Below are positions 8,586 through 58,800 of a DNA stretch of 64,000 nucleotides, one piece after another (position 1 is the stretch's first letter; each line of letters opens with the position of its first letter). The notes below the pieces were generated by a model that was not told the origin of the DNA, searched no databases, and saw only the letters and a list, made by a program, of their open reading frames with translations. Source of the DNA: Octopus sinensis (Eukaryota); contig NC_043005.1 of the NCBI RefSeq assembly GCF_006345805.1, positions 2,356,001 to 2,420,000 on the forward strand, read 5' to 3'. Made by a program: the position numbers and the translations under genes.

Positions 8586-9440
8586 CTCTAAAATCGATGA
8601 ACAACCTGATACGTCTGCCACAAAACAAGCAAAACGGATCGAGCAGACTGCAAAAAAGAACGGGTAGAAACAAATTGAGGGGCGGTGGAGCCAGAAGCCT
8701 CTGCATGGACAGTATATACTTCGAAGTCGAAATGCTGATGTAGACCAGGCAACAACCCATTGAGAAGCTCAGGACTGAAACCAGAGACTGAAGGTTTCAT
8801 AGTGGTGGCACAACATCAAAGCTTGCGCACAAAACACTACCAGGCTAACGCCCTTCAAAACGGTTCTGACCCTAAATGCAGATTCTGCAACACATTTGAC
8901 GAAACAATGGACCATCTCGTTTCGGGATGTTCTGTGCTGACACCAAACGAATACAAAAATCGCTACGATAGGGTAGGACAGTATTTACATAGAGAAATAT
9001 GTAAACACTACAAAATCAGCGCTCCTACTTACTGGTACGACCATCATCTTGAGTCAGTCGTTGAAGGTATAAACGTCCCTATCCTCTGGGATTTCCCAGT
9101 CAACACCGACAGAACGATCCAAGTCAATCGACCAGGCATAATCATTAAAGACAGAGAAAAAAATACTTGTAGACTAATAGATGTAAGTGTTCCCACTGAT
9201 AAAAATATATCTGTCAAGGAATTTGACAATTTGAGTCAATATAAACACCTGGAAATTGAAATACAAAAGATGTGACATATTAAAGCGAGAATTGTTCTTG
9301 TTGTTGTAGGTGCCCTAGGTATGATAAAAAAGAGATGTCAGAAACATCTAGATAATATCCCAGGAGAACCATGTCTCAAAGAAATCAAAGAGATTGAGCT
9401 GACGCGTACTGCCCACATCCTTAGAAAAAACCCTATCCGT
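8586..9440 (+). mobile_element. R4/Dong-like non-LTR retrotransposon 3' fragment (zinc knuckle + restriction-like endonuclease)
   Basis: LRSSGLKPETEGFIVVAQHQSL, CRFC..ETMDHLVSGC, ILWDFPVNTDRTIQVNRPGI, LIDVSVP..KE..YKHLEIEI, ALGMIKK; interrupted by stops. Confidence 0.9.
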
Positions 9441-10354: not shown

Positions 10355-12530
10355 AAAGACAAACATATGAATGAGAAGGAAGGCGAAAAAATCTAAAACC
10401 TGGACACAGTGAAGAAGAGCCTAATGATTATGATACTCTGAAAATGAGAATAATCAAAAAACTGAAAACCACAGATCTCAGAACGGACCACCGACCATAC
10501 CTCCCAAAAATCAAAATAGACAATAAAACAACATCAATAATAAATTGTATAAACCTGGTCGTCACGGAACTGATAGCCACAGAAACAAATAGCAATATCA
10601 CTGAGCTAAATGACATGATATAGGCAGCAGCGACAAAAGAAGCTGGATACTCCCTCGAACCCATCCAAGCAGGAGGACCACCACCCAAACAAACCCTGTG
10701 GATAAATAACATCCAAAACAAAATACAAGAAATGAGAAAAGATCTGTCGATTCTTAATGAAATCGGTAGACAATCAACGCTACTAAGCAACAAAAAGAAA
10801 ACAAAAATACTCCGCAAATACAACATCACAGAAAAAGATTTACCTGAGATAAAAGAAAAGCTAAAGCAGGATATCCTTGCCAAAGCACAAAGGATCCGCC
10901 GGGACGAGAAACGCCAACGTTTCTTTGAACAAAACGAACAGTTCAACTCCAACCCCAAAAAATTCTACCAAAAACTTGGCAAAAATAAAATAGATATCAA
11001 TGCAGTACCACCAGCAGAAGTGGAAGAATTTTGGAAAGAAATATGATCGGCGAAGGAGCAATTTCAGAAAAGGACTATCTGAGGAATTTCAACCATGTTT
11101 CGTGGTCTGTTAGCACAACAACTCCTTTATAGAAAGTGCGTCACTTTAAACTTAGAAACCTCCCAAAACTCCCCATATAACAAACCCAACTATAACAACT
11201 GAAGAGGTCACCCAGGCACTGCAAAGACTAAGCAACTAGAATGCACCTGGGCACGACAAGTTCCCCAACTTCTGGTTAAAACATCTGGCAGGAATGCACA
11301 AATAGCTGGCTGAAAACTTTAACGACATACTAGCAGAGCCAGAGACAATGCCTGAATGGCTCACGAAAGGGAAAGCCATCCTAATTACCAAATTCAATGA
11401 AACGGCAAAACCACAAAAGTACAGACCTATAACCTGTCTCTCTACAATTTACAAAGCCTTTACCACAATGATATCGCAGAGATTAAGCAAGCATCTGGAA
11501 GAAAACAACCTGTTTCCAGAAGCGCAGAAGTGATGCTGCAAGGGCTCATATGGCTGTAAAGATCAACTAATGATCAATAAAGCCATAACTGAAAACAGCC
11601 GCAGAAAGAAAGTTCTCAATATGGCCATGATCGACTACCGAAAGGCTTTTGATAGTATTCCCCACACGTGGATCCTCGAAACATTAACCATGATCGAGGT
11701 ACCACCAATAATTATAAAATACATAAGACATTCTATGAATACATGGTAGACAGTGCTACAGCTCCAAACAAAAGAGGGACTTGTGAAAACCAAAGACATC
11801 CCCATTAGAAGAGGAAAATTCCAGGGAGACACGCTCTCTCCACTCCTTTTCTGCTTGGCACTGACACCTCTATCTGACATGCTAAATAGATCTGGATGCG
11901 GATACAAATGTTACGGCAAAACAATCAACCACCTTTTATATATGGATGACCTAAAACTATACGCTACAAATGATAAACAGCTGGAAACACTACTACAGAC
12001 AGTTCATGGATTTACCAAAGAAATAGATATGAAATTTGGATTAGAAAAATGTGCCAAAGCAACCCTGAAAAGAGGAAAACTAGTTAAGAGTAGCAACATC
12101 ACACTAGATAAAACCAATGAAATAAAAGAATTAGACCAAAGCCAGGCATACAAATACTTAGGAATCAATGAACTAGATACGATACAACACACACAAATGA
12201 AAGAGAAAATAAAGAAAGAATACTATAGATGAGTTAGATCAATACTAAAAACAGAGCTCAATGCTAAAAACAAGATAATAGGTATTAACACTTTAGCCAT
12301 CCCAGTTATAAATTACAGCTACAATATCCTTAACTGGACACTAAATGAACTAACCAAAATAGACAGGAAAACAAGAAAAATAAATACAGGATTTATGATG
12401 CACCACCCAACATCTGACATAGAAAGGCTATATATACAACGTATAGGAGGTGGTGGAGACCTTATACAGCTAGAAAGCTATTCCAAAATAACCACCATAG
12501 GACTACAAAAATACCTACTTCAGAAGCAAG
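10355..12530 (+). mobile_element. R4/Dong-like reverse transcriptase pseudogene
   Basis: YRPITCLSTIYKAFT, IDYRKAFDSIPHTWI, GKFQGDTLSPLLFCLALTPL, HLLYMDDLKLYA, YKYLGI, HHPTSDIERLY; multiple stops and frameshifts. Confidence 0.93.
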
Positions 12531-16326: not shown

Positions 16327-17407
16327 CAGTAGTTTTATTTTTATAGCGTGCTTTCACTTCACTACCGAGCGCAGCTCTGTGTGCCTTGGGTATGTGCTGT
16401 GATTTGTTGTGATGCTCTGATGGTTATTGTATGGAAAGTGTTCTGCGTAGGATGTGTGCAGTGCCTAGTAGTGCAATTTTCTGTATGTTATATGTGTTTG
16501 TAAGTCCTGGTGCTTTTGTTATGTATTTGTCTGAATATTTTTTATCATGCCTAATGCACCTACTATGATAGGAATTGTTTCTGTTTTCAGATTCCACATT
16601 CTGGTTACCTCTATTTCCAGGTCTTTGTATTTTGAGAGTTTCTCCATTTCTTTTAGAGACACGTTGTCATCTGCCGGTATTGATACATCAATTAGAAAGC
16701 ATTTTTTTTCTTCATGATCTCTGACAACTATATCTGGTCTGTTGGCCTTAATTTCTCTATCTGTGTGTATCGCCATATCCCAGAGTATGGTTGCCTTCTC
16801 GTTTTCTGTGACCTTTTCTGGTGTGTGCCTATACCATCTTTTTTCTGTTGTTATTCCATAATGTTGGCATAGCTTCCAATGTATGTAGGTTCCAACTCTG
16901 TCATGTCTGTGAATATATTCCTTCTTAGCCAGGACTGGGCAGCTATAGATAATATGATTTATTGTTTCTTGTCCATCTCCACATATTCTGCAGCTACTTG
17001 TAATATTTCTTTTCATTACATGTTTTTGGTAATTTCTGGTGGGGAGGCTTTGGTCTTGTGCTGCAATTAAAAATCCCCCTGTTTCTGCTTTGAGTCCTGA
17101 GCTTCTCAACCATTGCTGGGATTTTTCTTTGTCTATTTCTTTTGCGTTTAGTTTAGTCCAGTATTTACCATGAAGGGGCTTTTCTTGCCATCGTTTTATC
17201 ATGGTTCGTTGCTGTTCTATTTTTAGTTTGGATTTCATTTGTTTTATAGCTTTTGTTGTTTCTTCATCTTCTTCTTCTTCTTCTTCATGTTTATTAGGTG
17301 GCATGATTTCTTGTTTGTATTTGTCAGCTTCCTTAAATACTGAGAACAGTTTTTTGTTTTGCTCCTGTTTTGCTGCTATCTGGATCAGTTTTCCTGATCC
17401 AGATAGC

Positions 17408-17410
<3 letters not shown>
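16327..17410 (-). mobile_element. Dong-like element, 5'-truncated (about 1.08 kb), flanked by (ATT)n, inside the intron
   Basis: Open frame with WQEKPLHGKY, WLRSSGLKAETGGFLIAAQDQSL, CRICGDGQETINHIIYSC, RPDIVV, IDVSIP, EKLSKYKDLEIE. Confidence 0.93.
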
Positions 17411-17450
<40 letters not shown>

Positions 17451-17462
17451 TTTTTATTATTA

Positions 17463-17538
<76 letters not shown>

Positions 17539-17869
17539 CATTATTATTATTATATGTTTGGCTTCTGCTTTGTATTTGTGGAAGTTGACTCCAAATCTCA
17601 CCCAGGGACCTCAAGAGACAACAAGTTAGAAGTACAAGTTGGTGTTATGACTAGGGTGCCATATATTTGGTTTTGCCCACGGTATTGTTCTAGAGAATGC
17701 CTAAGTAAATTAAAAGTTTTCTTTAAAAGTAATTTGATTAGTAGATGATTGTCTGATGTTAAGATGACTGTAAAATATGTTTTCTATTCTGTATATTTAA
17801 AAGTATTCTGACACTGTTTACGGATTAAGATGTTTGGGGGATTACATGGACAATATTTTACGTAGGATA

Positions 17870-27865: not shown

Positions 27866-30800
27866 TTAACCCCTTGACAACGGTTGACGCAAATATGCGA
27901 TCACACGTTTGTGATCGCATATTTAACAAACGACTACGCTGCTACTCGTCCTCAAAGTGAATCCGAGCATATCCCCGACAGGTTCCCGGCGAAGGCGATG
28001 AAATCAAAGTGTTTCTTGCGCTGCTTATTCTCATGGGCATCGTAAGAAAACCCACCCTCGGTTCGTATTGGAGTAGGAACCCTCAAACAGTGACACCGTT
28101 TTTCGCCGACACTATGCCGAGTGATCGTTTTTTCGCGCTACTGAAAAACCTACACTTTAACTCGGGCGTCAACACCGGTGATAGGCTGCACAAACTTCAG
28201 CCAATTGTTGACGCAGTCGCAGACAAATTCAAAACTGTCTATATACCTACGCAAGATATTTCCACAGACGAAAATCTCTGGAAATTTAAGAGGTGGTTGC
28301 GATTCAGAGAGTACAACCCTACAAAATGTGCGCAGTTTGGAGTGAAAGTATATAAAGTTTGTCAGTCATCCGGTGTCGCATCTGGCTATACTTGGAACTA
28401 TAAAATATATATTGGCGAGGACAGGGTCGCGGACGTTCTAGCATCAGCTAATGTCGTCATATCATTGAATAATGAACTGTTAGAGAGAGGGTATAACATT
28501 TATATGGATGACTGGTTTTCCAGTCCTGACTTGTTTCAGCAGTTGCAGGCCAGAACAAATGCCTGTGGGTTGGTCCTCGCTTTCAGGAGGAACATGCCCC
28601 TCGATCTTCGAAAACCGAAACTTGAGAAAGGAGAATTTGCATACCGTTCGACGGACAGTGGTCCCCTAGCGTTGGTCTGACGAAACAGAAAGTACGTGCC
28701 CATGCTGAGTACGATGCACTCTGCTGCAATGTCTGAAACTGGCAAACGGAACCGTGCAGGGGACCCCATCATAAAACCCGATGTTGTACAGGACTACAAC
28801 AGAGCAATGAGTGGAGTGGATAGATCCGATCAGATGGCCACCACACACAAATCTGCGCGAAGATTCGGAAAATGGTACAAAAAGATATTTTTGTACTTGT
28901 GGATATGGCACTCGTGAACAGAGATCTGATTTGACGAATGCTGGGTGGCGAAGCAACTGGACTCGCATTTCGCGAGGCTTTGATAAATGAAATTATCGAA
29001 GTTTCCGAGCTGCTCAACTATCGAACGCGTGGACGTCCTCACGCACGACCGACTCCAAACCGGCTTCTGAACCGACAAGGACATTTTCCGCGCTTTATAC
29101 CACCAACGGAAAAAAAGCAGAGTCCGGCAAGGAAATGTGTTGTATGCACCTCACACCACCGTAGGCGCGAAACCAGATGTCGTTATCCGGACTGTGATGT
29201 GTCCCTTTGCATAATACCGTGTTTTGAGTTGTACCACAGGCAAGCTATTTTTTGAACTTGAGCAGAATAACTCTTGCATATCATATTATGATAAATAGCT
29301 TCACATAGTTCATTTTCATAAACCAGTAGACGTAAATGTACGACGCTATGTCATTGTAACGGTGAACGTAAATATACACAATAGGCGCGTTATTCAATGC
29401 CTCAATGTCAACAAGAGTCACGGCCCTGACGGCATACACCCACAGGTTATAAAGGCGTTGGCTCCGGTCATCTGCGAGCCTTTAACACTTCTATTCAATA
29501 TGTCATTGGCGACAGGTGTTATAGCTGCGGACTGGAGAACAGCGATAATTTGCCCAATTTTCAAGAAAGGGAGCCGTGAAGACCCGCTTAACTACCGACC
29601 GGTTTCCCTTACTTCAATAATCAGCAAGATGTTCGAAACCATCCTTAAGAAAAGTATGTTGCTCCACCTCCAAAACACAGCCTCTATCTCTGATTCCCAA
29701 CACGGCTTCGTGCCGAAGAGATCATGCTTGACCAACTTACTGGTAATGGAAGAATTGGTGACGCGTATCCTCGATGATGGTGATGCTGTTGACATCGTTT
29801 TATTGGACTTTGCCAAAGCTTTTGACTCGGTTAACCACCGCCTATTACTTGTCAAGCTTCAAGCATATCGTTTCCATCCGGATATTGTACGATGAGTTGG
29901 TGCCTTCCTCTCAGATCGGTCCTTCCAAGTCCAAGTTAATGGTTCGCTGTCCGACGTCTCCAGTGCGAGCAGTGGCGTGCCTCAAGGTTCAGTGCTTGGG
30001 CCCTTATTGTTCTTAGTCTTCATAAATGACTTGCCCGACGACCTCACACAATACACCCTTCTATTTGCCGATGATGTCAAACTGGTCGCTCCTCGCGGTG
30101 ATATAGATGATCTTCAACGTGTCAAAGTGCTGTCATCTGCCTGTTGGCTCTTCTCCTGCAACTCAACTTGATTTCGAGCCGGGTCGTCTGCTGCTGGAGA
30201 GGACCGATCAGGTAAAGGACCTGGGTATCTTGGTGGATTCTTCCTTCTTGCCTTCAGCCCATGCGTCCATGCTGCCAACAAAGCATGCTGAGTTCTGTTT
30301 TTGATTCGACAGTCATTCGGAATGCTCACAGCAGCCATATTCCTACCGCTCTATGTCACGCTGGTGAGACCCATATTGGAGTATGGGATTCAAGCCTCTT
30401 CTCCTTATCTCCTCAAAGACATACATCATCTCGAAAGAGTCCAGAAGCTGGCTACCCGCATGGTTCTTGGTCTCAAGCATTTGTCTTACGAAGAAAGGCT
30501 GAGGACGCTCGACCTTTATTCTCTAGAAAAACGACGGCGCCGTGGTGATCTCATTCTCGCCCACAACATCATAAGCGGAAAGTGTAACCTCTCGAAAGAG
30601 TTGTTCTTCACTCCTGCTCCAGAGCGTCGGCTTCGGGGTCACTCCGAAAAGCTCTATCTGCGACGATTTCATCTCAATCGAAGGAGAGGGGCTTTCTCCC
30701 TCCGGGTTGCGGATCCGTGGAATAAGCTGCCGGACGAGATAGTGAGGATGCCGACGACCGCTTGGTTCAAAGTCTCCCTTGACCACAAATGGCCTGAACT

Positions 30801-50275: not shown

Positions 50276-51084
50276 GAGTGAGAGAGCAGTGCGTGCCATC
50301 AAAGTGATACTGGGGTAAAATATACGAAGCCCAGCATACCCATCATGACTACCTATTTCTTTATTACCCACAAGGGGCTAAACATAGAGGGGACAAACAA
50401 AGACAGACATAGGTATTAAGTCGATTATATCGACCCCAGTGTGTAACTGGTACTTAATTTATCGACCCGAAAGGATGAAAGGTAAAGTCGACCTCGGCGG
50501 AATTTGAACTCACAACGTAACGGCAGACGAAAAACCGCAAAGCATTTCGCCTGGCGTGCTAACGTTTCTGCCAGCTCGCCGCCTTAGTGACTACCTGTCT
50601 GACTACCTGTCTGATAAGGGTACACTAGGCACATGCATCACAACCATATGTGCGCGACATGGTGATCTTATATCAAGATAAACAGCACATGACCTTGCAG
50701 GTAGGGCCCAGTTAGAATGTTCTTCTGGTCGAGTAGCCCATCCCGCTCAAAAGGTCCCTGAATAAGGGTTGTTTAAGGATGTTGAACGAAACACCCATGT
50801 TTCCAGAGGTGAAATATTCAAAACCCAAAGAATCCCTCTCAACACATGGCTATGATGCTCCCTCACAACTTCTGCTTGTGATCAGAGATGCACATATCGT
50901 CAGCCACTAAGGGACATGCTCAACTGGCTATGGTCAAACAACTGACAAGCAAATCTGTGGTATTGAGCAAAATATTTGCTGTAGTCCATCTTTTATACCA
51001 AGGCAAAACAATGTACATGATAACACTTCCAATCAGGTAAGATCAGAAGCCATGAGAACCACTGCCTGGTACTGCATCAGGGAT
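50276..51084 (-). mobile_element. Non-coding (AAT)n-targeted element (about 580 bp) carrying a nested SINE
   Basis: Flanked by (ATT)n on both sides; an uninterrupted partial copy lies at 56823-57188; no ORF. Confidence 0.75.
50354..50583 (-). mobile_element. SINE family A, full length, nested
   Basis: GGCGGCGAGCTGGCAGAAACG head to AATAAAGAAATA tail; TGACTACC is repeated on both sides (50346-50353 and 50588-50595). Confidence 0.9.
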
Positions 51085-51207: not shown

Positions 51208-52182
51208 TTTCTACAATTCTTTTGTACACACGTGGCAATAATTCAACATCTTAGATTAACTGCTACAAAATGTTATAACATTAACTTATTCGAGAACAAG
51301 GACCAAAATCAAATCCGCTCATCATATTCCTCACAAGAATATGAGAGACAGCCATATTTTACATATTTTACTATGAACTCGAATAAATTGGGATGCTGAG
51401 GTCAGCAAAAAGAACCTGACGTTTCGGAACAAGTACTTCATTTGACAAAGAGAAGTTGTAAATGTCACATTTAAATAGAAACAATGAACGGAAATTCACC
51501 GAAGCTCAATTACATTTGGATATTGATCTTTAACTATTCACTAACATCATTAAAGAACACCACACTCCACATTTCTTTTTATATACTCTCTAACATTAAT
51601 TTGCTTGTTTACTGTTCCTCCTCCTCCTCCTCTTCTCTCCTTTTCCTCCTCAATTATATTCTTAGCTTTACCTGAACTCTCAGCTGAAACTGTTTTTTTT
51701 ACTTTTTATTTTTCTCTCAGACGAAAGTTCATCACAAAACGAGTGTCGCCTTCCCCCACCCCCATCCCCCAAACACACGGAAACACAACTCGAACTCATG
51801 ATCTGTTTCTATAATGTGTGCCACCAGCATTGCCCTGGATTCTGATTTACACGCAACGCCGTCATGATTGCCGTTGTTGTTGTCCTCTGAGTACCAGTAT
51901 TTAGAGTTACATCCATTTACGTTCTGTGTAGACTTTACATCATAAAACCAGTTCCAGTGAAACACTTCAGTTTATTGTAACCTTTACAACCATCTCTAGC
52001 CTCTCTGTGTATGCGTGTGTGTGTGTGTGTGAGTGTGTGTGTGAGTGTGTGTGTGTGTGGGGGGGGGGGTTAATATCCCCCGAAGATTACAGGACTATTA
52101 CCTCAGATATGAAATTATCAATAACAGTATGCTGATCAAAACATTTTATATAATACAAACATGTATACATATATATATGCAC

Positions 52183-52219
<37 letters not shown>

Positions 52220-52222
52220 ATG

Positions 52223-52266
<44 letters not shown>

Positions 52267-52353
52267 GTATATACATTATATATATATGATTATATATATA
52301 TATAATATATGTATATACATATATATATGATATATAATATATATATATATATA

Positions 52354-52388
<35 letters not shown>

Positions 52389-52437
52389 ATATATATATAT
52401 ATGATATATATATATATATGATATATATATATATATA

Positions 52438-52490
<53 letters not shown>

Positions 52491-52508
52491 CATATATATA
52501 TATAATAT

Positions 52509-52554
<46 letters not shown>

Positions 52555-52556
<2 letters not shown>

Positions 52557-52935
52557 ACAATTGAGGGTAAAATTAATTAATCAATTTCACCAAGTGTTCA
52601 GTATGTAAAAGGACCATTTAAGGCGAATTCAAAATATTACATTATTAATTAGGGCTTAGTAAAATAAATTACTTTGCCACATACTGAACTTAGTAGAAAT
52701 AGCAGCCAAAAAAAATTTTTTTAGCCGTTTCTACTACTTAAAGAAAATTTCTCTCAGATAATGTGTTACTCCAGACAGCTCACGAAGGTTGGAGGTAAAT
52801 ACAGAAAAATATCACAAGTACATAGATCGTTTGAGTACGTCAACGTTTCAGATTAGCCAAGTAAAATCAGCATTTCTTTCGTCAGCTCAAAATTTCTAAT
52901 TTCTTAAACATTATCTGAGAGAAATTTTTTAAGTA
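52555..52935 (-). mobile_element. Small non-autonomous Penelope-type/retrozyme-like element carrying the hammerhead, inserted in (TA)n
   Basis: About 380 bp of non-coding sequence bounded by (TA)n on both sides. It contains the ribozyme and a 20-bp perfect inverted repeat (52745-52764 / 52908-52927) enclosing it. Confidence 0.6.
52830..52891 (-). ncRNA. Type I hammerhead ribozyme with intact catalytic core
   Basis: Minus strand: UUUGAG-CUGACGA-A-AGAAAUGCUGAUUUUACUUGGCUAAUCU-GAAA-CG(UUGA)CG-UA-CUCAAA. Stem I is UUUGAG/CUCAAA (6 bp). Stem II is AGA/UCU plus GCUGA/UUGGC. Stem III is ACG/CGU with a UUGA loop. The cleavage triplet is GUA (cut between 52836 and 52835). Confidence 0.85.
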
Positions 52936-52937
52936 TT

Positions 52938-52980
<43 letters not shown>

Positions 52981-53013
52981 TGTGTGTATATATATATATA
53001 TTATATATATATA

Positions 53014-53070
<57 letters not shown>

Positions 53071-53427
53071 GGGTGAGAGACAGACGACGGACAGATTATC
53101 GAGGTAGAATTTCATAAAATAAGGAGACACAAAATGTCCGTACCTGCAACGGGAGTTTTGTTGATATTGTCAATTTCCTTTTCTTCATAATCATCATCAT
53201 CATCATCATCAACAGCAATAACAATAAAAACATTTCCAACAAAGATAATAACATCATCATCATCATCATCGTCCTCATCGATACCGTCGTCGCCATATTA
53301 TACATCATCATTATCATTATCGTCAACCGCATTATACTTTTATTATTATTGATATTAGCATTGTTATTATTATTAGTATAATTATTATATTTATAATTTC
53401 TATTATTCATATTATTAGTCTCGTTCT

Positions 53428-53565
53428 TTACTTTCTGCCGACCTTGTCCAAATCAGGAATATTAATCAATGTATCGATCATGCCGTGATTACGTTTGGAC
53501 AAACCCCGCGGTTTATCCATGTGAATTGCTATCTCCAGAATTTTGCTGGCTAAACCAATTATTTC
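53428..53565 (-). CDS. Pdf: Terminal coding exon of a cerebrin / pigment-dispersing factor (PDF)-family neuropeptide precursor
   Basis: The minus strand has a strong acceptor (TTTTTTTTCTCTCTCGTTTCAG, AG at 53567-53566). The phase-0 exon reads EIIGLASKILEIAIHMDKPRGLSKR-NHGMIDTLINIPDLDKV-GRK*. The 17-mer between KR and the amidation signal GRK matches recalled Aplysia cerebrin NGGTADALYNLPDLEKI-amide at 9/17 positions, and the preceding EIIxLA helix matches cerebrin precursors. The signal-peptide exon was not identified. Confidence 0.9.
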   Translation of the reverse strand, partial: EIIGLASKILEIAIHMDKPRGLSKRNHGMIDTLINIPDLDKVGRK

Positions 53566-56822: not shown

Positions 56823-57188
56823 GAGTGAGTGAGAGAGCCACACATGCCATCAAAGTGACACTCGGGTACCACCATACGAAGCCCAATATACACCTCATGA
56901 CTACCTGTCAGATAAAGTAACACCAGCAACATGCATCACAACCACATTTGCGTGGCATGGTGATCTTATATCAAGATAAATGGCGCATGAGCATGCAGGT
57001 GGGGACCAGTTAGAATTTTCTTCGGGTTGATTAACACATTCCTCTCAAAAGGTCCCTGAATAAAGGTTGTTTAAGGATGTTGAACGAAACACCCATGTTT
57101 CCAGAAGTGAATTATCCAAGCTCCAAAGAGTCCCCCTCAACACACGGCTACGATGCTCCCCACTACTTCTGCACATATCGTCAGCCAC
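56823..57188 (-). mobile_element. Second partial copy of the 50276-51084 element
   Basis: GAGAGAGC..TGCCATCAAAGTGA..TGACTACCTGTC..AAAAGGTCCCTGAATAA..GCACATATCGTCAGCCAC. Confidence 0.8.
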
Positions 57189-57787
57189 CAACCTGTTGCT
57201 TCTGCAATTGCTCTACAGTCTTTTCTTGTCTTTTCTATTTTACGCACCAATAATTTCACACGCACTCACATATTATTTGTATGTATATGCGCTAGTGTGT
57301 GCGGTGTGTGTGTGTGTTGTGTGTGTGTGTGTGTGTGCATGTTTCTGTCCCAAACTCCCCCACCCACTAAAACATCAAACTAATCAGCACTCGGCCGATT
57401 TCCATTCCAGTTTGATCATCAATGTCCAAAATAGCCTCAGTCACTGGCAACAGCAGCTGATGGCATCAACGTGGTTATTTTAATGGACGTGATTGGTGTG
57501 TAGAGAGATATAAACAGTCCAGATTATCACACTTTATAAATATATATTTCATATTCACTTTATAAATGCATTTTCCAATTACACACACACACACACACAA
57601 ACACACATATACATATATATATACGCATACACACGCACACACACATTTATAAATAGGTTCTCGATCGATACAAAAAATATCTTCATATATTTCATGCTAT
57701 GCTGTCTCTACCAGCTTCCTGTTGCTATCACGTTAAAAACTCAGGTTTGACGGGTGTCATACGAAAATGCATATATATATGCCCACA

Positions 57788-58192: not shown

Positions 58193-58800
58193 TGATGGTC
58201 ATCCACTCGTGACCGAGGAAGACCATTGCCGACCTTCAGGAACATTGTGCGCTCTAGGACTAACTTATATTTTGCATTTCTGGCTCTGTTGGTGGCTAAA
58301 GAACCCTATTCTTGACAAGCATATACAATTGCAAACATTGCAGACCAAACTTTCCCCATTCACTACCCTAGCAGTGCGCTTTCGAGCAGCACGCTTAAAT
58401 TCTTCGTGAAGAATACGTGCTCTCCCAAATGTGTCGACCCCTCCTTAACCTGCTTCCTCCATCTGTGGCGATGACAGGCATTGCTCTCCCAGTCAGTCTC
58501 CTGCATATTACGGGCCTTTAATGAGGACTTGACACAGTCCTTAAATTGCAGCTTTGGTTTCTGCCGGGGTCTCTTTCCATTCACAAGTTTCCCATATAGC
58601 ATCTGTTTAGGGATCCTACTATCCTTCATTCTAATAAGATGCCCAGTCCAACGTAACCGGTGCTTGTGCACCATCGCCTCAATACTCAAGGTATCAGCTT
58701 TCCTCAGGACATGTGTATCCGGAGATTTCAAGGTCCAGCCAACATTCAGGGCGTGTATAAGTCTTGAAAAAATTACAAAAATCGATTCCAAGTGAGAATG
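58193..58800 (-). mobile_element. RTE-clade LINE 3' fragment ending in a (TGTA)n tail
   Basis: SIEAMVHKHRLRWTGHLIRMKDSRIPKQMLYGKL..GKRPRQKPKLQFKDCVK..W. Confidence 0.9.

What the first reader, a model, noticed from the sequence alone, without database searches (positions are those of the whole stretch)
52830..52891. Intact hammerhead ribozyme in sense orientation about 540 nt downstream of the cerebrin/PDF stop codon
Seen: every conserved core nucleotide (CUGACGA, GAAA, GUA) and all three stems are present on the minus strand, the same strand as the neuropeptide exon. Known: minimal type I hammerheads are carried by Penelope-like elements and retrozymes, and a hammerhead in a 3' UTR can destabilise mRNA (mammalian CLEC2 precedent). 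Inference: a long 3' UTR isoform or read-through transcript of the neuropeptide gene would self-cleave here. That could act as a ribozyme-based terminator or turnover switch for a circadian/feeding-type neuropeptide. Caveat: a proximal AATAAA at 53344-53339 could end most transcripts before the ribozyme.
Basis: partly seen in the sequence, partly recalled or inferred. Interest (0 to 1): 0.8.

Follow-up and report, generated by a model that had tools for sequence, protein, structure and literature searches.

The report
Lone hammerhead-like motif in repeat insertion
A sequence with all the conserved letters of a hammerhead self-cutting RNA does lie 537 bases downstream of an octopus-type cerebrin/PDF neuropeptide exon, but it is a single weak copy inside what looks like a small mobile-element insertion, with no sign that it regulates the gene.

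Summary
The motif is at the stated place, on the minus strand at 52891-52830. The full hammerhead core is there, with a 6-bp helix I, a 3-bp helix III and cleavage expected after A52836. "Intact" overstates it. Helix II needs a bulged A after A9, closes with A-U rather than G10.1-C11.1, and is 3 bp + a 3x3 internal loop + 5 bp. No Rfam hammerhead model reaches threshold. The best is 13.8 bits against 56.3. The hammerhead fold makes up about 0.6% of the predicted ensemble.

Chance would give about 0.004 such motifs per 64-kb window, which is roughly 150 in an octopus-sized genome. The motif sits in a 385-bp, 30% GC block (52554-52938) that is very strongly self-paired (z = -7.5). (TA)n arrays flank the block on both sides. 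Its size, composition, self-pairing, bulged nucleotide and self-complementary helix III match published minimal hammerheads of Penelope-like elements and molluscan non-LTR retrozymes. There is no second copy, tandem array or Penelope-like reading frame in the window.

Best reading (about 0.5): a solo, probably inert, retroelement-derived hammerhead. Rival (about 0.35): a chance motif in another repeat. A working 3'UTR switch is unsupported (about 0.05). An AATAAA lies 84 nt after the stop codon. No octopod genome or transcriptome could be reached.

The parts
52830..52891 (-). Hammerhead-like type I motif. Helix I 5' strand 52891-52886; core CUGACGA 52885-52879; unpaired A 52878; helix II 52877-52850; GAA 52849-52847; helix III hairpin 52846-52837; A17 52836 (predicted cut between 52836 and 52835); helix I 3' strand 52835-52830.
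   Evidence: Read directly. It is the only descriptor hit in the window, against 0.004 expected in shuffles. No Rfam hammerhead model reaches threshold.
52821..52900 (-). Possible extended helix I: 4 more base pairs (52898-52895 with 52826-52823) beyond a 3x3 internal loop.
   Evidence: Constrained evaluation gives -10.6 kcal/mol. The MFE (-12.5) keeps this extension and helix II but pairs core nucleotides with the helix III strand. Inference only.
52554..52938 (-). 385-bp non-coding block that carries the motif: 30% GC, four consecutive hairpin domains (52934-52736, 52735-52692, 52689-52596, 52591-52566). Interpreted as one inserted repeat unit.
   Evidence: MFE -101.8 kcal/mol against -65.9 +/- 4.8 for shuffles, z = -7.46. 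Domains. No open frame longer than 45 codons. No other copy in the window.
52735..52764 (.). Left arm of a 28-30-nt inverted repeat that encloses the motif.
   Evidence: 20-nt exact core ACATTATCTGAGAGAAATTT found twice in inverted orientation, 0.02 expected. The 30-nt arms are 93% identical.
52908..52935 (.). Right arm of the same inverted repeat.
52164..52553 (.). (TA)n array, about 195 copies, flanking the block on its low-coordinate side.
   Evidence: Tandem Repeats Finder.
52939..53066 (.). (TA)n array, about 66 copies, between the block and the sequence just downstream of the gene.
   Evidence: Tandem Repeats Finder.
53428..53565 (-). Last coding exon of a cerebrin/PDF-type neuropeptide precursor. 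Mature peptide NHGMIDTLINIPDLDKV (amidation signal GRK) at 53490-53440; stop codon 53430-53428.
   Evidence: Translation and splice acceptor context. Similar to the oyster cerebrin/PDF-like peptide (PMC4200219). No database homologue was retrieved.
53339..53344 (-). Proximal AATAAA, 84-89 nt after the stop codon. The next ones on this strand are at 51976 and 51710.
   Evidence: Pattern scan. Usage unknown.

Best explanation
The motif is a solo copy of a minimal type I hammerhead carried by a small non-coding retroelement-like unit. That unit is a relative or derivative of Penelope-like elements and non-LTR retrozymes, and it landed in a (TA)n microsatellite about 0.5 kb downstream of the cerebrin/PDF gene. 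In such elements the hammerhead processes multimeric element transcripts, often acting as a dimer of two neighbouring copies. Here there is only one copy, its helix II is weak, and no stabilising tertiary contacts are recognisable. It is therefore most likely inert or nearly so, and a bystander of the neuropeptide gene.

Shown: the core and helices as described, the 385-bp self-paired AT-rich block, the (TA)n flanks, and single-copy status in the window. Inferred: the retroelement origin, the insertion event and the lack of activity.
For: The complete core plus helices I and III is 0.004-per-window rare in shuffles. Several features that my descriptor did not require match published min-HHR or retrozyme traits.
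- An unpaired nucleotide lies between A9 and helix II (PMC4209133).
- Helix III plus its loop (ACGUUGACGU) is self-complementary, with a -10.8 kcal/mol homoduplex, as expected for motifs that act as dimers.
- It is a 3-bp helix III with a tetraloop, close to the invertebrate type described in PMC7229834.
- The host block is 385 bp, and mussel retrozyme units are 350-390 bp.
- The block is 30% GC, against a stated <45-50% (PMC7229834).
- The block is highly self-paired, z = -7.46.
- It is embedded in a (TA)n array, a documented preferred target of some Penelope-like clades, which also tend to form inverted-repeat structures (PMC8557442).
Penelope-like elements are an established, partly recent component of the Octopus vulgaris genome (PMC13282606). 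Most min-HHRs in other genomes occur as single dispersed motifs (PMC4209133).
Against: No second copy, tandem array, pseudo-LTR or Penelope-like reading frame is in the window. The closing pair of helix II is A-U, not the G10.1-C11.1 reported as highly conserved in PLE min-HHRs. Helix II is interrupted rather than the 6-8 contiguous bp described. No Rfam hammerhead model scores above noise. The (TA)n preference is documented chiefly for Naiads, which lack canonical hammerheads. I could find no family members anywhere, so there is no covariation evidence. No octopod genome is in the collections I could search.
Confidence: 0.5

Rival explanations
1. Chance motif. The block is some other kind of repeat or hairpin-rich AT-rich DNA associated with the microsatellite. 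The hammerhead core plus three short pairings arose by chance, with no ribozyme ancestry or activity.
For: The expected chance rate of 0.004 per 64 kb amounts to about 150 sites in a genome of about 2.5 Gb, so a genome-wide scan will meet such sites. Only the relaxed descriptor with a bulge hits. Helix II is poor and lacks G10.1-C11.1. Rfam models do not recognise it. The motif's fold is no better than shuffles (z = -0.87) and the hammerhead conformer is about 0.6% of the ensemble. There is no other hammerhead-like site in the window.
Against: Several traits not demanded by the descriptor coincide with published min-HHR or retrozyme traits. These are the bulged nucleotide, the self-complementary helix III, the block's size, GC content and self-pairing, and the (TA)n setting. 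Real hammerhead-bearing elements run to thousands of copies in other mollusc and invertebrate genomes (PMC7229834, PMC4209133). If octopus is similar, that makes a far higher prior than chance.
Confidence: 0.35
2. One reading: a working cis-acting ribozyme in a long 3'UTR or read-through isoform of the cerebrin/PDF transcript. It would cut after A52836 and so end or destabilise the mRNA.
For: It is on the same strand as the exon and 537 nt after the stop codon. Only one AATAAA lies between the stop codon and the motif, and the next is 1.45 kb from the stop, so a long isoform would include it. The core is complete with a cleavable GUA triplet. A precedent for a hammerhead in a 3'UTR exists in Clec2 (PMC6155905). 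Helix I can be extended across an internal loop at the distance where canonical type I motifs make tertiary contacts (speculative).
Against: It is a single copy, so no dimer can form in cis. Helix II is weak and helix III marginal, and the inactive fold is favoured. In longer transcripts the 30-nt inverted repeat dominates the fold. Min-HHRs showed no detectable single-motif cleavage, and low activity even as dimers (PMC4209133). The setting looks like a transposable-element insertion rather than a conserved UTR element. The proximal AATAAA may end most transcripts. Nothing is known about conservation.
Confidence: 0.05
3. The block is a non-autonomous DNA transposon (MITE or foldback type) that targets TA, and the hammerhead-like motif is incidental to it.
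For: There is a 28-30-nt inverted repeat plus further palindromes. TA-rich flanks surround it. MITEs and Tc1-mariner elements are annotated in Octopus vulgaris (PMC13282606).
Against: The inverted repeats are internal, not at the ends of the block. The two ends (CACACAATTGAGGG... and ...TTTAAGTATTT) are not inverted copies of each other. No other copy lies in the window.
Confidence: 0.1

Closest known systems
Minimal type I hammerheads (min-HHRs) of Penelope-like elements (Cervera and de la Pena 2014, PMC4209133)
   Same: Type I topology with an open helix I of about 5-6 bp. One unpaired nucleotide between A9 and helix II. A long helix II region. A short, self-complementary helix III suited to dimer formation. 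Mostly found as single dispersed motifs, with low or undetectable activity as a monomer. Some host element clades prefer (TA)n targets (PMC8557442).
   Different: Helix II closes with A-U, not G10.1-C11.1, and is interrupted by a 3x3 internal loop. There is no pseudo-LTR, no RT/GIY-YIG reading frame and no second motif within the 64-kb window. No family or covariation has been demonstrated.
Metazoan non-LTR retrozymes, e.g. the Mytilus galloprovincialis repeats of 350-390 bp (Cervera and de la Pena 2020, PMC7229834)
   Same: The unit size (385 bp), low GC (30%), strong self-pairing of the unit RNA, and a type I hammerhead with a 2-3-bp helix III capped by a tetraloop. Hosts are molluscs.
   Different: Retrozymes are defined by tandem repeats with a hammerhead in each unit, and this is one isolated unit. 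Circular RNA and self-cleavage are untested. No related copies could be retrieved.
Clec2 3'UTR discontinuous hammerhead of rodents and platypus (Martick et al. 2008, as summarised in PMC6155905)
   Same: A hammerhead located downstream of a stop codon on the sense strand of a protein-coding gene.
   Different: The Clec2 motif is a discontinuous type III hammerhead conserved across species and shown to cleave. This one is a contiguous minimal type I motif in a repeat-like insertion, with unknown conservation, unknown inclusion in the mRNA and predicted weak folding.
Rfam hammerhead families (Hammerhead_1 RF00163, Hammerhead_3 RF00008, HH9, HH10, Hammerhead_II, RAGATH-1-hammerhead RF03152)
   Same: The conserved core letters align to the RAGATH-1-hammerhead model.
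   Different: The score is 13.8 bits against a gathering score of 56.3. The other hammerhead models give no match at E<=10.

Membership tests
Hammerhead ribozyme (any type) | Conserved core: C3 U4 G5 A6 N7 G8 A9, G12 A13 A14, A15.1-U16.1 pair, H17 not G | tested here: met
   CUGACGA ... GAA ... A-U ... A17 read at 52885-52836 on the minus strand.
Hammerhead ribozyme (any type) | Three helices joining directly at the core | tested here: inconclusive
   Helix I has 6 bp and helix III 3 bp. Helix II forms only with a bulged A, closes with A-U, and is 3 bp + 3x3 loop + 5 bp (-3.3 kcal/mol). The hammerhead conformer is about 0.6% of the ensemble.
Hammerhead ribozyme (any type) | Scores at or above the gathering threshold of a curated covariance model | tested here: not met
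   No hit at gathering. The best sub-threshold hit is RAGATH-1-hammerhead at 13.8 against 56.3 bits, E = 3.2. None at E<=10 on 501 nt.
Hammerhead ribozyme (any type) | Site-specific self-cleavage abolished by core mutation | not testable with these tools
   Needs in vitro transcription.
PLE min-HHR | [quoted passage not shown] | tested here: met
   A52878. The feature is as listed in PMC4209133.
PLE min-HHR | Highly conserved G10.1-C11.1 pair and a contiguous 6-8-bp helix II | tested here: not met
   The closing pair is A-U and the helix is interrupted.
PLE min-HHR | Palindromic 15.2-16.2 and loop 3 (able to form a dimer) | tested here: met
   ACGUUGACGU pairs with itself over 10 positions, two of them G-U, at -10.8 kcal/mol.
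PLE min-HHR | Lies in a PLE pseudo-LTR, or has a second motif in tandem or nearby (<50 kb) | tested here: not met
   No second motif, no repeat of the block and no PLE-type reading frame seen among the long ORFs. This covers the 64-kb window only.
PLE min-HHR | Belongs to a genome-wide consensus family with covariation | not testable with these tools
   No octopod genome is in the searchable collections. Pattern scans and protein-word searches found nothing.
Non-LTR retrozyme | Tandem repeats of about 170-400 bp, each with a type I hammerhead | tested here: not met
   A single 385-bp unit. Tandem Repeats Finder and self-BLAST show no second unit.
Non-LTR retrozyme | Low GC content and a highly self-paired unit RNA | tested here: met
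   30% GC. z = -7.46 and 62-64% of bases paired.
Non-LTR retrozyme | Expressed as linear and circular RNA | not testable with these tools
   No transcriptome access.
Regulatory 3'UTR hammerhead (Clec2 type) | Lies within the mature mRNA 3'UTR | not testable with these tools
   An AATAAA lies 84 nt after the stop codon and the next is 1.45 kb from the stop. Usage is unknown.
Regulatory 3'UTR hammerhead (Clec2 type) | Conserved at the orthologous locus in related species | not testable with these tools
   Orthologous loci could not be fetched.
MITE / TA-targeting DNA transposon | Inverted repeats at the element's termini | tested here: not met
   The inverted repeats at 52735-52764 and 52908-52935 are internal, and the block's ends are unrelated.

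The most novel reading that the evidence does not exclude
The lone hammerhead has been co-opted. A long 3'UTR isoform of the cerebrin/PDF mRNA runs through it. It then folds into an active ribozyme, helped by the extended helix I with its internal loop and by the internal loop of helix II acting as tertiary contacts. It cuts after A52836, which would give a ribozyme-based control of neuropeptide mRNA length or stability in a cephalopod.
Probability: 0.04. Interest if true: 0.7.

Novelty: new member of a known kind. Interest (0 to 1): 0.3.

Why it matters
If the block belongs to a family, it would document hammerhead-bearing retroelements of the Penelope-like or retrozyme kind in octopods. My two literature searches that paired hammerhead with octopus or cephalopod terms found no report of hammerheads in cephalopods. 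It would also add a case of such an element landing next to a neuronal gene. That is a useful annotation but not surprising, because these elements run to thousands of copies in other molluscs. Only proof of cleavage within cerebrin/PDF transcripts would make it notable. For the scan, the lesson is that a complete hammerhead core with short helices is expected by chance about 60 times per Gb. Such a hit needs family, covariation or cleavage evidence before a function is claimed.

Tried and rejected
1. Rfam at gathering score over the whole window, and at E<=10 on 501 nt and 91 nt, gave no usable hammerhead match.
2. A strict descriptor without a bulged nucleotide gave no hit, and only the relaxed one does.
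3. I looked for other hammerhead-like sites. All 29 CUGANGA heptamers in the window were inspected and none had a compatible GAAA and helices.
4. I looked for other copies of the block in the window by blastn with word size 7. It found only the block's own internal inverted repeats.
5. I tried to reach orthologous loci and transcripts. A protein-word search with the 45-aa exon peptide found nothing. Exact look-ups of three window ORFs also found nothing: 53096-53410, 57067-57483 and 58363-58791. These look-ups need the caller's exact start codon, so a negative result is weak evidence.
6. I looked for family members through a translation of the block and through DNA pattern scans. The scans covered metagenome contigs twice and prokaryotic genome contigs once. 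All were empty, as expected for collections without cephalopods.
7. The SINE idea fails: no tRNA, 5S, 7SL or snRNA-like match in the block at E<=10.
8. The MITE idea fails: the inverted repeats are not terminal.
9. A coding explanation fails: no open frame longer than 45 codons in the block.
10. A Pfam scan of ten long ORFs found LINE-type RT fragments and a piggyBac-like transposase fragment but nothing that points to a Penelope-like element.

Full report
**What is there**

On the minus strand, 52891-52830 reads UUUGAG CUGACGA A AGAAAUGCUGAUUUUACUUGGCUAAUCU GAA ACGUUGACGU A CUCAAA.
- All invariant hammerhead positions are present: C3-A9 = CUGACGA, G12-A14 = GAA, the A15.1-U16.1 pair, and H17 = A in a GUA triplet.
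- Helix I is 6 bp (52891-52886 with 52835-52830).
- Helix III is ACG/CGU with a UUGA loop.
- The topology is type I, open at helix I. The predicted cut lies between 52836 and 52835.

The neighbouring gene claim is also correct.
- A polypyrimidine tract and an AG at 53567-53566 precede an open frame that ends in TAA at 53430-53428.
- The frame encodes ...KR-NHGMIDTLINIPDLDKV-GRK.
- The peptide shares 8 of 17 positions, including the N-x-G...D-x-L-x-N-x-P-D-L frame, with the oyster cerebrin/PDF-like peptide NLGTVDSLYNLPDLLYRamide (PMC4200219).
- Molluscan cerebrins cluster with PDF (PMC6425005).
- The motif starts 537 nt after the stop codon.
- On that strand, AATAAA occurs at 53344-53339 and then not until 51976 and 51710.

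**Where "intact" fails**

Helix II is not a clean stem.
- Read in register from A9 and G12 it gives one A-U pair followed by mismatches.
- It forms only if A52878 is left unpaired. It is then A-U, G-C, A-U, a 3x3 internal loop, and five pairs of which two are G-U, closed by a 6-nt loop. On its own it is worth -3.3 kcal/mol.
- Its closing pair is A-U, not the G10.1-C11.1 typical of natural hammerheads.

Helix III alone is not predicted to be stable. The hammerhead secondary structure scores -8.1 kcal/mol against an MFE of -10.0. In the MFE, core nucleotides pair with the helix III strand, and the hammerhead conformer makes up about 0.6% of the ensemble. The 71-nt stretch folds no better than shuffles (z = -0.87).

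Rfam 15 gives no hammerhead family at gathering score. None appears at E<=10 on 501 nt. On 91 nt the only one is RAGATH-1-hammerhead at 13.8 bits against 56.3, which aligns the core and skips helix II.

**Chance**

I wrote a type I descriptor with these requirements:
- helix I of at least 5 bp;
- CUGANGA;
- an optional 1-nt bulge;
- helix II of at least 3 bp adjacent to the core;
- GAAA;
- helix III of at least 3 bp starting with A-U;
- H17 not G.

It finds exactly this site in the window. Without the bulge it finds nothing. In 1000 dinucleotide-preserving shuffles of the window the mean was 0.004 hits. The motif is therefore unlikely by chance in this particular window. The same rate means roughly 60 chance sites per Gb, so a scan of a whole octopus-sized genome would meet on the order of 150. 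None of the other 28 CUGANGA heptamers in the window has a compatible GAAA and helices.

**Context**

The motif lies in a 385-bp non-coding block (52554-52938) of 30% GC, with no open frame above 45 codons. The block sits between a (TA)~195 array (52164-52553) and a (TA)~66 array (52939-53066). It looks like something inserted into one long (TA)n microsatellite.

The block is extraordinarily self-paired, at -101.8 kcal/mol against -65.9 +/- 4.8 for shuffles (z = -7.46). It folds as four consecutive hairpin domains. The first domain is closed by a 28-30-nt inverted repeat (52735-52764 and 52908-52935). The repeat has a 20-nt exact core, for which 0.02 matches are expected. This domain holds the hammerhead-like motif in its 143-nt interior.

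The inverted repeats are internal and the block's ends are unrelated, so it is not a MITE. No tRNA, 5S or 7SL-like head was detected. There is no second copy of the block or of the motif in the 64 kb. The recognisable transposon fragments elsewhere in the window are LINE-type RT and piggyBac-like.

**Comparison with the literature**

Cervera and de la Pena (PMC4209133) describe the minimal hammerheads of Penelope-like elements as follows:
- type I motifs with a short helix I and a large helix II;
- a conserved G10.1-C11.1 pair;
- a small palindromic helix III that lets two copies form an active dimer;
- mostly found as single dispersed motifs;
- no detectable cleavage in vitro as single motifs, and low activity even as dimers.

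The present motif has the bulged nucleotide, the short helix I and a self-complementary helix III. ACGUUGACGU pairs with itself at -10.8 kcal/mol. It lacks G10.1-C11.1 and a contiguous helix II.

Cervera and de la Pena 2020 (PMC7229834) describe non-LTR retrozymes as follows:
- tandem units of 170-400 bp (350-390 bp in mussel);
- low GC content;
- highly self-paired RNA;
- type I hammerheads whose helix III in invertebrates is about 2 bp with a tetraloop.

The block matches in size, GC content, self-pairing and helix III style, but it is not tandem.

Craig et al. (PMC8557442) report strong 5' truncation, inverted-repeat arrangements and microsatellite targets for Penelope-like elements. The targets include (TA)n, chiefly for the Naiad clade, which lacks canonical hammerheads. 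Penelope-like elements are an established part of the Octopus vulgaris repeat content, with an expansion about 56 My ago and families that were recently active (PMC13282606). My two literature searches that paired hammerhead with octopus or cephalopod terms found no report of hammerheads in cephalopods.

**Most likely explanation**

The block is most likely one isolated unit, or a remnant, of a hammerhead-bearing retroelement related to Penelope-like elements or retrozymes. It inserted into a (TA)n array downstream of the gene (confidence about 0.5). The insertion, the family membership and the loss of activity are inferences. What is shown is the anatomy.

The main rival is a chance motif inside some other hairpin-rich repeat (about 0.35). 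It cannot be excluded, because I could not obtain a single related sequence and so have no covariation.

- It needs transcripts that skip the AATAAA at 53344.
- It needs a monomeric minimal hammerhead with a poor helix II to fold and cut at cellular Mg2+.
- Published relatives did not cleave detectably as single motifs.
- In a long transcript the 30-nt inverted repeat dominates the predicted fold.

One point in its favour is speculative. Helix I can be extended by 4 bp across a 3x3 internal loop. That places internal loops in helices I and II roughly where canonical type I ribozymes make tertiary contacts.

**What could not be done**

No octopod genome or transcriptome is reachable with these tools. 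Word-based protein searches, exact look-ups of window ORFs and pattern scans of metagenome and prokaryotic contigs all came back empty. Copy number, orthologous presence or absence, 3' end usage and cleavage remain open. They are listed as next steps.

**Verdict**

The link to retroelements is plausible. The regulatory reading is unsupported. This is a probable new member of a known kind of element and of modest interest.

Noticed in passing
window 52735-52764 and 52908-52935; also 52691-52736, 52596-52689, 52566-52591: A 28-30-nt near-perfect inverted repeat and three further hairpins fill the 385-bp block (z = -7.46). If the block is transcribed, the 30-bp duplex would be a natural substrate for A-to-I editing, which is heavy in cephalopod neural RNA.
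   Followed up: partly
window 52554-52568 and 53067-53075: Both (TA)n arrays are followed on the + strand by a similar short string (CACACAATTGAGGGT and CAGAGGGT). This could be a trace of a target duplication or of a local duplication, or it could be coincidence.
   Followed up: no
window 50600-50875 and 56897-57171: Two direct copies of an interspersed repeat, about 276 bp at 86% identity, lie on either side of the cerebrin/PDF last exon, about 6.3 kb apart. Each contains a CTGACGA heptamer on the minus strand but no hammerhead.
   Followed up: partly
window 53181-53334 (and the ORF at 53096-53410, minus strand): (ATC/GAT)n trinucleotide repeats just downstream of the stop codon create a spurious 104-codon Met/Leu/Asn-rich open frame. 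It is not on record as a protein.
   Followed up: partly
window 28009-28680: A fragment of a piggyBac-like transposase (Pfam DDE_Tnp_1_7, E = 7e-45).
   Followed up: partly
window 11753-12232, 29362-29895, 8760-9275, 16519-17601: LINE-type reverse transcriptase fragments (RVT_1) and zf-RVT domains. The window is dominated by transposon remnants and by di- and trinucleotide microsatellites.
   Followed up: partly
window 53428-53565 (minus strand): The cerebrin/PDF-type exon had no homologue in the 5.8-billion-protein collection by word search, so this precursor seems not to be represented there. The upstream signal-peptide exon was not located.
   Followed up: partly
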